A stretch of DNA of 64,000 nucleotides from positions 25,172,001 to 25,236,000 of the forward strand of contig NC_135253.1 in the NCBI RefSeq assembly GCF_964204865.1, read 5' to 3'. The translations under genes and the position numbers were made by a program. The notes under the pieces were generated by a model, which saw only the letters and a list, made by a program, of their open reading frames with translations, searched no databases and was not told the origin of the DNA. This document shows positions 62,001 to 63,886 of the stretch, in pieces (the stretch's first letter is position 1; the number at the start of each line of letters is the position of its first letter). The DNA comes from Styela clava (Eukaryota).

Positions 62001-63886
62001 TTGTTCAGTCCAGAGAAACCGGGGATCGAACAGGTGAGAAAATAGAAAAGTTGAGCATTCTATTCGATCAGTGAATTTGATGAAAGAGTTGTGAGGACAC
62101 TATCTCTCCAAGCTGTCATGGTCTCCATCCCTGGATTAAATTAGGACATTATACGTGAAGAGTTATATAAGTTGCACGTTTGCTCAGGGTTTCCTATTCT
62201 TCAAGTAAAAATACTTCAAATAATGATGGCAGAAGCCGCATTCCTAATTCTTTGTTGAAGAGGTGCTGAGTTTGTTATACTGATTTATATGCTTCTTCCC
62301 AATCAGCATTTTTTCACCTCAGTTAATCTGCTTGTCATTCTGTGGGTTGGTGAAAAATACAAACAATACCTAAATTTTACTACTTAACCATGATATAATT
62401 TCTAAAGAAGTGAACGCTCTATAATGAGTACCTGAAAAGCAAATCAAAATTAAAAGTGTTACTTACTTTTGAGACACCCTGTTTATTTGCCCTTGTGACA
62501 AGCTTCCGTGGTAAGCGATGGAATTTCTTTCAAAATAAAATAAACTCTTCTTACACAATTTTCAAAATCATTTTCACAGGGTCGACTTGAACTGTGGGTT
62601 GACATGTTTCCGATGGATATGCCCATGCCTGGCCCAGCTGTGGATATTTCACCAAGGAAACCGAAAGGGTAAGTCTGCAGCCGTGTTGCAATTTCACCGA
62701 TACTTTGAGTAGTTGCCCATCAAAACGTTTAACAGATAAAAATTCAGCGATTACACGTGTAAAATCGAGATGAATAGCTCAAACTTGATATCCTATATGA
62801 TTGGTTCAGTACTGTAATACCGTAGTAGGCCGTTAAAATAAAATGCATTGTATAAAGGTCGGAGAGAAAGTAAGATATTTTGATTGTTTTGGAGTTGGAG
62901 TCGAATTTTGAATCATTCAAACCACCGAGAGTCGGGTGAAAAATGTATTTTTCTTGTTTGTGTCCGGAGTCTCCCATCAACTCGGTAACTGCAATGACGA
63001 GCATTATTCTAACTAATGGCTACGTGTTCCCAACGTACTAAATTCAAAATATTTTCTAGCGAACAATTTCATTTAAGTTTTATTTCCGAATAATATCGGA
63101 AGTTTAGTTTGATAGATTTTTATACTATTTATTATACTGTATTTTTTTTCTTTGCTTGCCCAAATTAAGCTAATCCGTCTGTTCGTTTGAAACGTTAGCA
63201 AAACTTATCATATCTTGCTCCCCTACTATAGTCATTATGAATAAGCCTCGTCAAAAAAACTTTCTACTGGTGCCGGTAGATGTCGCTCTAACCACCCTCT
63301 CAATATCTGATCAGCTTTCAGCTTCGAGTTATCATTTGGAACACAGAAGACGTTGTTCTACAAGACGACGATTTTTTCACTGGAGAAAAAGCATCCGATA
63401 TTTATGTCAAAGGGTACGATATGACGTCATCGTTACGTCATCACATTTATAGTAGTAATTTTCAGACCCTCTGATTCAAGCAAGTTGAGAAGTATGTCAA
63501 GATTCAGGGGCGGGAGAATTTTTATAAATCTTTTTTCAGTTAACAGTTAATTTTAGTAGGGTTAAGAGTAATAGGGAAGTATGGGTGGATATGCGGTCTC
63601 AGTCGTAATGAAATAGTCTCCTTCGGTATAAAAAAGATCGACCAAAACTGTTATTATTTTGCTCGAAAGTTATATACACCCCCTCCCTACTTTCCGTCTA
63701 TGTACTTGCCAACCTCTCAGCTTGCTTGGAAAATGAACCATTACATGTTTCGTGATGATTAGAAAGTTTTTTAATATCATCACATAGGTATGAGATGAGA
63801 GTGATTATCTGGAACACAGACGAGGTTGTTTGCGAAGATGATGATTTTTTTACTGGGGAGAAAATGTCTGACATATATGTGAAAGG
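43875..63886 (+). CDS. OTOF: Otoferlin-like type II ferlin, partial multi-exon gene (C2de, linker, C2E, start of C2F); 5' part not found in window, 3' part beyond window
   Basis: Spliced translation gives [122 protein letters not shown] and [24 protein letters not shown]. All match otoferlin as recalled. Exon phases chain consistently with GT-AG introns. Confidence 0.96.
44878..45037 (+). CDS. OTOF: Otoferlin exon (C2de second half), phase 0-1; NAGNAG acceptor, alternative start 44881
   Basis: ttccag|gag|GTC...ACAG|gtataa; (E)[52 protein letters not shown]. Confidence 0.93.
46751..46783 (+). CDS. OTOF: Candidate 33-nt otoferlin cassette micro-exon, phase 1-1
   Basis: ttcctatttccatcaaag|CTGCAATC...CAAG|gtatat; in frame [11 protein letters not shown]. 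Confidence 0.45.
46962..47015 (+). CDS. OTOF: Candidate 54-nt otoferlin cassette exon, phase 1-1
   Basis: ttgacag|ATGAAGAA...AATC|gtgaga; purine-rich, in frame [18 protein letters not shown](R). Confidence 0.65.
48653..48786 (+). CDS. OTOF: Otoferlin linker exon, phase 1-0
   Basis: tctactcag|GGATC...GAC|gtgagt; [44 protein letters not shown]; bridges the phases of the flanking conserved exons. Confidence 0.82.
49189..49416. mobile_element. MITE family A, longer copy, inside otoferlin intron
   Basis: GGTACTCCCGAAGTATGCAAACTAAGATAGCGGACACC ... GGTGTCCGCCATCTTGATTCACATACTTCAAAAGTACC with ~60-bp arms. Confidence 0.8.
49483..49584 (+). CDS. OTOF: Otoferlin exon with DWWSKYFAS motif, phase 0-0
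   Basis: ttcccag|GAA...GAG|gtgggt; [34 protein letters not shown]. Confidence 0.95.
50409..50511 (+). CDS. OTOF: Otoferlin acidic linker exon, phase 0-1
   Basis: gtactcag|GAAAAA...GATG|gtgaga; [34 protein letters not shown]. Confidence 0.88.
53612..53887. mobile_element. hAT-like MITE in otoferlin intron
   Basis: GGGGTTCCCAAACCGTGGCCCGCGGGCC ... TTTTGGGAATCACTG; related degenerate copy near 1388-1665. Confidence 0.62.
55165..55481 (-). mobile_element. tRNA-derived SINE
   Basis: Minus-strand 5' end GGCGGTGTGGCGCA (A-box-like) and GTTCGAAT (B-box); second copy at ~19170-19480. Confidence 0.72.
55612..55662 (+). CDS. OTOF: Candidate 51-nt otoferlin cassette exon, phase 1-1
   Basis: ttttcttccaacgcgtag|GTTATC...GATG|gtaaag; [17 protein letters not shown]. 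Confidence 0.65.
56999..57156 (+). CDS. OTOF: Otoferlin basic linker exon, phase 1-0
   Basis: cattgcag|TTCCAG...GAGG|gtatgc; [53 protein letters not shown]. Confidence 0.9.
58107..58322 (+). CDS. OTOF: Otoferlin exon preceding C2E, phase 0-0
   Basis: ttccacag|CTG...AAG|gttcgt; [72 protein letters not shown]. Confidence 0.94.
58914..59095 (+). CDS. OTOF: Otoferlin C2E exon 1, phase 0-2
   Basis: ttctacag|AGT...GGAAA|gtaagt; [60 protein letters not shown](K). Confidence 0.96.
59681..59851 (+). CDS. OTOF: Otoferlin C2E exon 2, phase 2-2
   Basis: cttttag|AACT...GCAT|gtgagt; [56 protein letters not shown]. Confidence 0.96.
60715..60959. mobile_element. hAT (Charlie-like) MITE in otoferlin intron
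   Basis: CAGGGG...CTCCTG termini, GGGCC subterminal repeats, 8-bp flanks CCATACAC/CTATACAC. Confidence 0.75.
61057..61214 (+). CDS. OTOF: Otoferlin exon (C2E-C2F linker), phase 2-1
   Basis: cttccag|CTTT...AACG|gtaggt; [52 protein letters not shown]. Confidence 0.95.
61891..62033 (+). CDS. OTOF: Otoferlin exon, phase 1-0
   Basis: aacacag|GCCAC...CAG|gtgaga; [48 protein letters not shown]. Confidence 0.95.
62580..62668 (+). CDS. OTOF: Otoferlin exon, phase 0-2
   Basis: ttttcacag|GGT...AAGG|gtaagt; [29 protein letters not shown](G). Confidence 0.96.
63315..63413 (+). CDS. OTOF: Otoferlin C2F first exon, duplicate copy A (99 nt, phase 2-2)
   Basis: tgatcag|CTTTCAG...AAGG|gtacga; (G)[32 protein letters not shown](G). 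Confidence 0.9.
63788..63886 (+). CDS. OTOF: Otoferlin C2F first exon, duplicate copy B (99 nt, phase 2-2)
   Basis: cacatag|GTATGAG...AAGG|gtatct; (G)[32 protein letters not shown](G). Confidence 0.92.

What the first reader, a model, noticed from the sequence alone, without database searches (positions are those of the whole stretch)
63315..63886. Tandemly duplicated, probably mutually exclusive exon encoding the first strands and acidic loop of otoferlin C2F
Seen: two 99-nt phase 2-2 exons separated by a 374-nt intron, each with AG/GT ends. Copy A reads [33 protein letters not shown] and copy B reads [33 protein letters not shown]. They are 25/33 identical in protein with 14 synonymous codon differences, implying an old duplication with both copies under purifying selection. 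Including both would duplicate beta-strands of one C2 domain, so mutually exclusive use is inferred. Differences fall around the acidic loop (ED/DE, LQ/CE, A/M), and A has two fewer acidic residues, so splicing could tune Ca2+/lipid binding of the membrane-proximal C2 domain. I know of no such exon pair in vertebrate OTOF. Further copies could lie past the window edge.
Basis: partly seen in the sequence, partly recalled or inferred. Interest (0 to 1): 0.85.

Follow-up and report, generated by a model that had tools for sequence, protein, structure and literature searches.

The report
Alternative calcium-loop exon pair in otoferlin
A sea-squirt otoferlin-like gene carries two old, selectively maintained copies of the exon that builds a calcium-binding loop of its last C2 domain; the copies differ at a known calcium-ligand position, RNA shows the first copy in use with the second skipped, and use of the second copy has not yet been seen.

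Summary
Two 99-nt, phase 2-2, AG/GT-flanked exons lie at 63315-63413 (A) and 63788-63886 (B), 374 nt apart. They share 25 of 33 residues, and synonymous sites between them are saturated.

Both match otoferlin's last C2 domain, strands 1-2 and top loop L1. This domain is C2F in the old naming and C2G in the new.

A diverged relative (metagenome contig L006) has both types in the same order, with the type-specific residues and splice sites kept and unalignable introns. Exon B there differs mainly at third codon positions (13 of 17 differences). B has therefore been kept as coding sequence.

Spliced RNA contigs from four runs in three studies all join upstream exon > A > downstream exon and skip B. 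No B-containing or A+B transcript was seen, so mutual exclusivity is only half shown.

A carries Gln where otoferlin has the Ca2+ ligand E1742. B keeps Glu.

There are no further copies of this exon. The terminal membrane-anchor exon is also duplicated, as in human OTOF.

This is a new member of a known kind: alternative exons derived from tandem duplication.

The parts
62580..62668 (+). Constitutive upstream exon ([29 protein letters not shown] + 'gg'). Its donor at 62668 feeds the alternative pair.
   Evidence: Joint 62668>63315 in all four RNA runs. Translation. Orthologous exon in L006 at 6720-6806.
63315..63413 (+). Exon A, 99 nt, phase 2-2. This is the derived type (FQL..LQDDD..EKASD) and the copy used in all sampled RNA. 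It has Gln at the position of otoferlin Ca2+ ligand E1742.
   Evidence: Joints 62668>63315 and 63413>64991 in runs X1, X2, X5 and X9. A-type orthologues in L006 at 8596-8691 and L007 at 2422-2517. Ligand mapping from PMC12526402.
63414..63787 (+). 374-nt intron between A and B. It contains a 17-nt stem that bridges its two ends (63477-63493 with 63712-63728) and a hairpin (63752-63783) just upstream of B's acceptor.
   Evidence: the repeat finder pair I3. Fold energy z = -3.74, with 0 of 100 shuffles as stable. An analogous stem sits in L006 at 8718-8734/9142-9158 and is kept in L007. Any function is inferred only.
63788..63886 (+). Exon B, 99 nt, phase 2-2. This is the ancestral-like type (YEM..VCEDDD..EKMSD) and keeps Glu at the E1742 position. 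It is skipped in all sampled RNA contigs.
   Evidence: B-type orthologue in L006 at 9234-9329 with AG/GT kept, 82% nt and 91% aa identity, and differences by codon position of 3/1/13. Only one unspliced low-depth contig touches it.

Best explanation
A and B are a tandem-duplicated pair of alternative exons in a tunicate otoferlin-like gene. Each encodes beta-strands 1-2 and Ca2+/membrane-binding top loop L1 of the last, membrane-proximal C2 domain. Exon A is the default choice. It has the stronger acceptor and is the only copy seen in whole-run RNA contigs. Exon B is a weaker, regulated exon. It is spliced in instead of A in a cell type, stage or condition not captured by those contigs. The swap changes five type-specific residues. 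The main one is the Ca2+ ligand position: Gln in A, Glu in B, equivalent to otoferlin E1742. The other four are beta-1 positions 2 and 3 (Q/E and L/M), L/C next to the ligand, and A/M two residues before the second ligand Asp. The two isoforms should therefore differ in Ca2+ affinity or Ca2+-dependent membrane binding of this domain. Shown: the duplication, its age, purifying selection on both copies, A-only splicing, and the ligand-position difference. Inferred: that B is spliced in, that use is mutually exclusive, and the functional effect.
For: The sequence anatomy is confirmed. Both exons hit otoferlin 9qe2_A residues 1563-1594 (45.5 and 49 bits). The motif spacing matches the published L1 residues E1742, D1743, F1746, F1747 and D1754 (PMC12526402). 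Relative L006 has A-type then B-type exons in the same order, with AG/GT kept and all five type-specific residues kept. Introns are unalignable and dS is saturated. Exon B dN is 0.059, within the range of the flanking constitutive exons (0.052-0.083). Its differences fall 3/1/13 by codon position (binomial p = 3.4e-4). Exon A gives 3/0/21 (p = 6e-8). Spliced contigs of four runs from three studies show 62668>63315 and 63413>64991, that is A in and B out, and none joins A to B. B's polypyrimidine tract is weaker than A's in both species: 0.57 and 0.52 against 0.65 and 0.74. Its donor lacks +5G. Both fit a regulated exon. The same gene also has a duplicated terminal exon with one copy used. Homologous alternative 3' exons are known in human OTOF (PMC8373072).
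Against: No transcript containing B was seen. The only RNA-run sequence over B is an unspliced contig of depth 3.6. Contigs drop rare variants, so this is weak evidence. Only four runs could be laid. A second gene copy or sister species (L007) has an intact A but a broken B, with a stop codon, Asp>Gly at the second ligand, and the donor lost. Its other exons are still constrained (omega 0.15). B can therefore be lost. Both exons are 99 nt, so co-inclusion or double skipping would stay in frame, and neither the frame nor the 374-nt intron enforces exclusivity. No A-type or own-species B-type spliced protein fragments were found in the protein database, but length limits make that uninformative.
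Confidence: 0.6

Rival explanations
1. Exon B is a spare copy that is no longer spliced in this species. It would be a recently silenced relic whose sequence has not yet decayed, and the gene makes only the A isoform.
For: No B junction appears in four RNA runs. B is broken in L007. The second copy of the equivalent vertebrate pair has decayed in a bird-like contig, with no acceptor AG and R>W and T>I changes. B's acceptor and donor are weak.
Against: Between this genome and L006 every synonymous site is saturated. Even so, B keeps its frame, both splice sites, 29 of 32 residues and all conserved C2 residues. Its dN matches the constitutive exons and 13 of 17 changes are at third positions. 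B is the best conserved exon at nucleotide level in the region. Silencing would have to be very recent and independent of the L006 lineage.
Confidence: 0.2
2. B is a cassette exon that is added after A, so both are included. That would give an isoform with a 33-residue internal repeat, as written in the lizard gene model P0063.
For: Both exons are 99 nt and phase 2-2, so A+B stays in frame. The lizard model P0063 contains both copies in tandem. A stem bridging the ends of the A-B intron could bring A's donor near B's acceptor.
Against: No 63413>63788 joint appears in any run. Repeating strands 1-2 and loop L1 would disrupt a C2 beta-sandwich, an inference from the known C2 fold. The lizard entry is an uncurated 'hypothetical protein' model, and gene predictors commonly chain alternative exons together.
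Confidence: 0.05
3. The pair is an assembly or haplotype artefact.
For: None found.
Against: The copies differ at 27 of 99 bases. The 374-nt spacer is unique sequence. The same two types occur in the same order on independent metagenome contigs L006 and L007.
Confidence: 0.01

Closest known systems
Human OTOF homologous alternative 3' coding exons, a tandem exon duplication-derived substitution (PMC8373072)
   Same: It is in the same gene family and arises the same way, as a tandem-duplicated homologous exon used alternatively. This gene has that pair too: terminal anchor exons at window-equivalent 68741-68917 and 69775-69951. RNA uses the distal copy.
   Different: The finding concerns a different exon, encoding loop L1 of the last C2 domain. 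It is an internal pair, not alternative last exons. No paper found here describes it.
Tandem pair of the same exon in sauropsid OTOF (lizard model P0063 = KAH0622938.1, Phrynosoma platyrhinos; bird-like contig L009)
   Same: The same exon of the same domain is duplicated in tandem. The first copy is the lineage's usual type (..EKSSDIFVRG). The second is closer to the sequence common in other invertebrates (..[18 protein letters not shown]), as B is here.
   Different: Both lizard copies keep Glu at the E1742 position. The bird copy 2 lacks an acceptor AG and looks decayed. Copies within each lineage share lineage-specific residues: D at motif position 19 in A and B, R at position 32 in the lizard copies. 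That favours independent duplications, although 33 residues cannot decide it. Splicing of the vertebrate pair is unknown to me.
FGFR2 exons IIIb/IIIc with the IAS2-ISAR intronic stem (recalled from memory, not tested)
   Same: It is a two-member alternative exon pair from a tandem duplication. A stem forms between elements at the two ends of the intron separating the pair. Stems at that position are found here in this genome and in L006/L007, with different sequences.
   Different: No function of the stem is shown here. The L006 intron as a whole is not unusually stable (z = -1.57). No Dscam-type docking and selector arrangement was found.
Alternative C2B-coding exons of C. elegans synaptotagmin snt-1 (recalled from memory, not tested)
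   Same: Alternative homologous exons change part of a Ca2+-sensor C2 domain.
   Different: It is a different protein family, a different part of the domain and a different phylum.

Membership tests
Ferlin family, otoferlin-like branch | C-terminal ferlin region with a single membrane anchor (Pfam Ferlin_C) | tested here: met
   PF16165 hits above the cut-off at both terminal exon copies and the preceding exon of this gene. The terminal exons end ...KKILGA-stop after a hydrophobic stretch.
Ferlin family, otoferlin-like branch | Best similarity to otoferlin rather than to the dysferlin/myoferlin branch | tested here: met
   Exons A and B score 45.5 and 49 bits to otoferlin, against 26-31 bits to dysferlin and myoferlin, and align without the one-residue gap those need. 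tblastn with otoferlin and FER1L6 proteins tiles exons from about 43.8 kb to 69.9 kb. Absence of DysF and presence of FerA/FerB were not tested.
Mutually exclusive exons derived from tandem exon duplication | Adjacent homologous exons of equal length and phase, each with its own splice sites | tested here: met
   Both are 99 nt, phase 2-2, with AG/GT and 25 of 33 residues identical.
Mutually exclusive exons derived from tandem exon duplication | Both copies conserved as coding sequence in other species | tested here: met
   L006 has both types with splice sites. dN is 0.08 for A and 0.06 for B, against saturated dS. Changes are biased to third positions.
Mutually exclusive exons derived from tandem exon duplication | Transcripts carry exactly one member, and each member is seen in some transcript | tested here: inconclusive
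   A-only transcripts appear in four runs. No B-only and no A+B transcript was seen. Logan contigs drop rare variants, and only one read-laying run was allowed.
Ca2+-binding C2 domain (otoferlin C2G) | Acidic L1 ligands equivalent to E1742, D1743 and D1754 | tested here: met
   For exon B the test is met with E-D...D (PMC12526402). Exon A has Q-D...D, so one of the three L1 ligand positions is neutralised. This is conserved in the A-types of L006 and L007. The L3 ligands lie in the shared downstream exon (WDADHFSADD).
Competing RNA structure control of exon choice (docking/selector type) | One docking site complementary to a selector next to each variant exon, conserved across species | tested here: not met
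   No such arrangement appears among the inverted repeats of this genome or L006. Only a stem internal to the A-B intron recurs.

The most novel reading that the evidence does not exclude
The pair may be one ancient alternative-exon module of otoferlin's last C2 domain. It would date to the common ancestor of tunicates and vertebrates, or earlier. One copy would keep the ancestral bilaterian loop (B here, copy 2 in lizard). The other would be a derived loop that became the main isoform (A here, the ..SSDIFVRG exon of all vertebrates). It would survive in some ascidians and sauropsids and be lost elsewhere. The ancestral-type copy might be reserved for particular secretory or sensory cells.
Probability: 0.15. 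Interest if true: 0.75.

Novelty: new member of a known kind. Interest (0 to 1): 0.5.

Why it matters
Otoferlin is the proposed Ca2+ sensor of hair-cell exocytosis, and its last two C2 domains make the Ca2+-dependent membrane contact. Here evolution has kept two versions of one Ca2+-binding loop side by side. They differ at a residue that ligates Ca2+ in the solved structure. This is a natural Glu/Gln swap held for longer than synonymous sites can record.

If B is used in defined cells, the pair offers a simple test of how L1 charge in this domain sets Ca2+ sensitivity. It would also show that tunicates, the sister group of vertebrates, diversify otoferlin by exon choice. The parallel pair in sauropsid OTOF suggests the same exon has been duplicated more than once, or kept from an old duplication.

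Tried and rejected
Relatives came from the one metagenome scan instead.
- Three protein-database searches used the open stretches around B, A and the downstream exon. They found no spliced fragment of this species and no A-type sequence. Candidates are limited to 0.55-1.75 times the query length and need a called start, so this says little.
For that reason there is no structure prediction of the two domain variants and no full-length search.
- A U12/U2 intron incompatibility was considered and rejected. B's donor GTATCT is only partly U12-like, and L006 has GTGGGT.
- Steric hindrance was rejected because the intron is 374 nt.
- Frame-based (NMD) enforcement was rejected because both exons are 99 nt.
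- A tblastx self-comparison of the gene found no other duplicated exons besides the terminal pair. Other hits were short repeats with stop codons.
- Literature searches for a described pair in ferlins found none.
- A search for a genome note to check the species name found nothing useful.
- Rfam and tRNA scans of the high-depth patch near window-equivalent 68.2-68.4 kb were blank.
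Full report
**What is in the sequence**

The upstream exon ends at 62668 with two bases of a Gly codon. Exon A runs 63315-63413 and exon B 63788-63886. Each is 99 nt, preceded by AG and followed by GT, and 374 nt separate them.

Read in phase, A is [34 protein letters not shown] and B is [34 protein letters not shown]. They share 72 of 99 bases. They differ by eight replacements, thirteen synonymous codons and the split Gly codon. 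NG86 gives dN 0.157 with synonymous sites saturated.

A motif scan of the window plus 19 kb downstream finds only these two copies. A six-frame search of the whole 377-Mb assembly finds four homologous exons in all: A, B, and one in each of two other ferlin genes.

**What gene and what organism**

Both exons match solved otoferlin (9qe2_A, chain residues 1563-1594) at 45.5 bits for A and 49 bits for B. They match dysferlin and myoferlin less well.

Vertebrate otoferlin and FER1L6 proteins tile exons on the + strand from about 43.8 kb to the window end and on to about 69.9 kb in window-equivalent coordinates. Pfam Ferlin_C scores above its cut-off on the last exons.

Earlier agents of this scan call the genome Styela clava. 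I did not test the species. I did find a cellulose-synthase domain and a GH6 domain 2 kb apart on one strand of contig 9. From established knowledge, that fusion gene is found only in tunicates among animals. The host is therefore a tunicate, the sister group of vertebrates.

**Which part of the protein**

The 2025 otoferlin structure paper (PMC12526402) reports that C2G binds three Ca2+ ions. The L1 residues involved are E1742, D1743 and D1754, together with L3 residues. F1746 and F1747 of L1 insert into the membrane.

The motif [15 protein letters not shown] in the solved chain fits all those spacings. The exon therefore encodes strand 1, loop L1 and strand 2.

Exon B has E-D-D-D-F-F...S-D at these positions and exon A has Q-D-D-D-F-F...S-D. 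So A neutralises one of the three L1 ligand positions, while both keep the two aromatic residues and both Asp ligands. The other type-specific differences are:
- positions 2 and 3 of strand 1 (Q/E and L/M);
- L/C next to the ligand;
- A/M two residues before the second Asp.

**RNA evidence**

One run search and one read-laying run were allowed. Nine small runs held 5-7% of the words of a 10-kb stretch. That share fits exons only.

Four runs from three studies were laid on window-equivalent 62401-68400. All four give GT..AG joints 62668>63315, 63413>64991, 65126>65719, 65818>67112 and 67305>67779. They are therefore spliced RNA.

Exon A is included and exon B skipped in the assembled isoform of every run. 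No joint links A to B. The only sequence over B is a 236-nt unspliced contig at depth 3.6, against 72 for the spliced contig in the same run.

These are assembled contigs, which drop minor isoforms. They show that A is the main choice. They do not show that B is never used.

**Comparative evidence**

This is the strongest support for B. A metagenome scan with the downstream exon returned contig L006 from an unidentified relative.

L006 has the same exon structure. Its exons are 75-82% identical in nucleotides and 84-91% in protein, and its introns cannot be aligned. It carries:
- an A-type exon, [32 protein letters not shown] at 8596-8691;
- 542 nt further on (intron 8694-9232, 539 nt), a B-type exon, [32 protein letters not shown] at 9234-9329.

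Both have AG and GT. All five type-specific residues are kept within each type.

Between the two species, synonymous sites are saturated in every exon. Exon B has dN 0.059, inside the range of the constitutive neighbours (0.052-0.083). Its 17 differences fall 3, 1 and 13 on codon positions 1, 2 and 3 (p = 3.4e-4 against equal thirds). Exon A gives 3, 0 and 21. B is the best conserved exon of the region at nucleotide level. A sequence not translated over that span would not look like this.

A second contig pair (L007/L008) comes from a paralogue or a sister species of L006, with dS 0.15 and omega 0.15. It has an intact A-type exon but a broken B. The B copy has a stop codon, Gly for the second ligand Asp, and no donor. 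B can therefore be lost while the gene stays constrained. This fits A as the default exon and B as the specialised one.

**Which copy is older**

Single-copy versions of this exon from many other animals read close to [11 protein letters not shown][DE][21 protein letters not shown]. B is nearer to that sequence and to vertebrate otoferlin than A is.

Several unidentified sequences whose downstream exon resembles this gene carry only a B-like exon (..V[VI]CEDDD..EKMSD). In them it is fused or spliced directly to the flanking exons.

No A-type sequence was found outside this genome, L006 and L007, though that search was limited by length. B therefore looks like the ancestral form and A like a derived copy that has taken over as the main isoform.

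**How the choice might be made**

Nothing structural enforces exclusivity. Both exons are multiples of three, the intron is long, and both introns are GT-AG.

B has the weaker signals in both species. Its polypyrimidine content is 0.57 and 0.52, against 0.65 and 0.74 for A. Its donor here is GTATCT, without +5G. This is the usual picture of an exon that needs an activator.

The A-B intron of this genome folds more stably than shuffles (z = -3.74). A 17-nt stem joins its two ends (63477-63493 with 63712-63728). A hairpin sits over the last 36 nt before B.

L006 has a different 17-nt stem at the equivalent place. In L007 that stem is kept, and one mismatch becomes a pair, while the middle of the intron has diverged. 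However, the L006 intron as a whole is not unusually stable (z = -1.57).

I treat the stem as a lead. It resembles the FGFR2 IIIb/IIIc intron stem, which I recall from memory. It is not a finding.

**Relation to what is known**

Alternative exons born by tandem duplication are a well-known kind. In human OTOF the homologous alternative 3' coding exons are documented (PMC8373072).

This gene has that feature too. Two terminal anchor exons lie at window-equivalent 68741-68917 and 69775-69951. Each has an acceptor in the right phase and its own stop codon. The RNA contigs continue from 67879 into the distal copy. L006 shows only the distal type.

I found no paper describing a pair at the L1 exon of the last C2 domain in any ferlin.

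- **Lizard.** Protein P0063 (KAH0622938.1, Phrynosoma platyrhinos) is an otoferlin by its match to 9qe2_A. It contains two tandem copies, residues 653-685 (..EKSSDIFVRG) and 686-718 (..[18 protein letters not shown]).
- **Bird.** The bird-like contig L009 has a second copy 250 nt after the first that lacks an acceptor AG and looks decayed.
- **Fish.** Fish-like sequences have an intron of only about 100 nt there and no second copy.

Whether the tunicate and sauropsid pairs share an origin cannot be settled with 33 residues. Each lineage's two copies share a lineage-specific residue, which leans towards independent duplications.

**Limits**

Several steps could not be done:
- The spliced protein was not joined, so no structure was predicted for the two variants and no full-length search was made.
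- Only four RNA runs, as contigs, could be examined.

**Verdict**

The duplication is old and both copies are under protein-level selection. A is the exon in use in the sampled RNA. Use of B, and hence strict mutual exclusivity, is inferred but not shown.

The specific new point is the Gln/Glu difference at a Ca2+-ligand position, conserved by type across species. This is a new member of a known kind, of moderate interest.

Noticed in passing
L002:5741-5917 and L002:6775-6951 (window-equivalent 68741-68917 and 69775-69951, past the window end): The terminal exon encoding the membrane anchor is also duplicated in tandem. Each copy has an acceptor in the right phase and its own stop codon. RNA contigs continue into the distal copy. 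The relative L006 shows only the distal type. This parallels the known homologous alternative 3' exons of human OTOF (PMC8373072).
   Followed up: partly
P0063 residues 653-718; L009:833-919 and L009:1170-1256: Sauropsid otoferlin has a tandem pair of the very same exon. Both copies are intact and chained in a lizard gene model (Phrynosoma platyrhinos, KAH0622938.1). A second copy without an acceptor AG lies on a bird-like metagenome contig. The lizard's second copy is nearly identical to the common invertebrate sequence.
   Followed up: partly
L007:3039-3131 (also L008): A second, closely related gene copy or sister species of L006 (dS 0.15) has an intact A-type exon. Its B-type exon is broken by a stop codon, an Asp>Gly change and a lost donor. 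It also has Trp>Arg in the WDADHF motif of a downstream exon. L008 looks like a mix of the L006 and L007 versions.
   Followed up: partly
G000:C9:16177457-16180164 (+): Cellulose-synthase (PF03552) and GH6 (PF01341) hits lie 2 kb apart on one strand. This is the tunicate-type cellulose synthase gene. It supports the earlier agents' statement that the genome is a sea squirt.
   Followed up: partly
L004:5801-6000 (window-equivalent 68201-68400, intron before the first terminal exon copy): Summed contig depth is very high (about 1,000-12,000) in all four RNA runs, with many loose ends at 5894-5984. It looks like a dispersed repeat or an abundant RNA. Rfam and tRNA scans were blank.
   Followed up: partly
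G000:C1:4907788-4910866 (-) and G000:C1:13987700-13989315 (+): Two further ferlin genes, of the dysferlin/myoferlin type by the one-residue-shorter exon, each have a single copy of the homologous exon.
   Followed up: no
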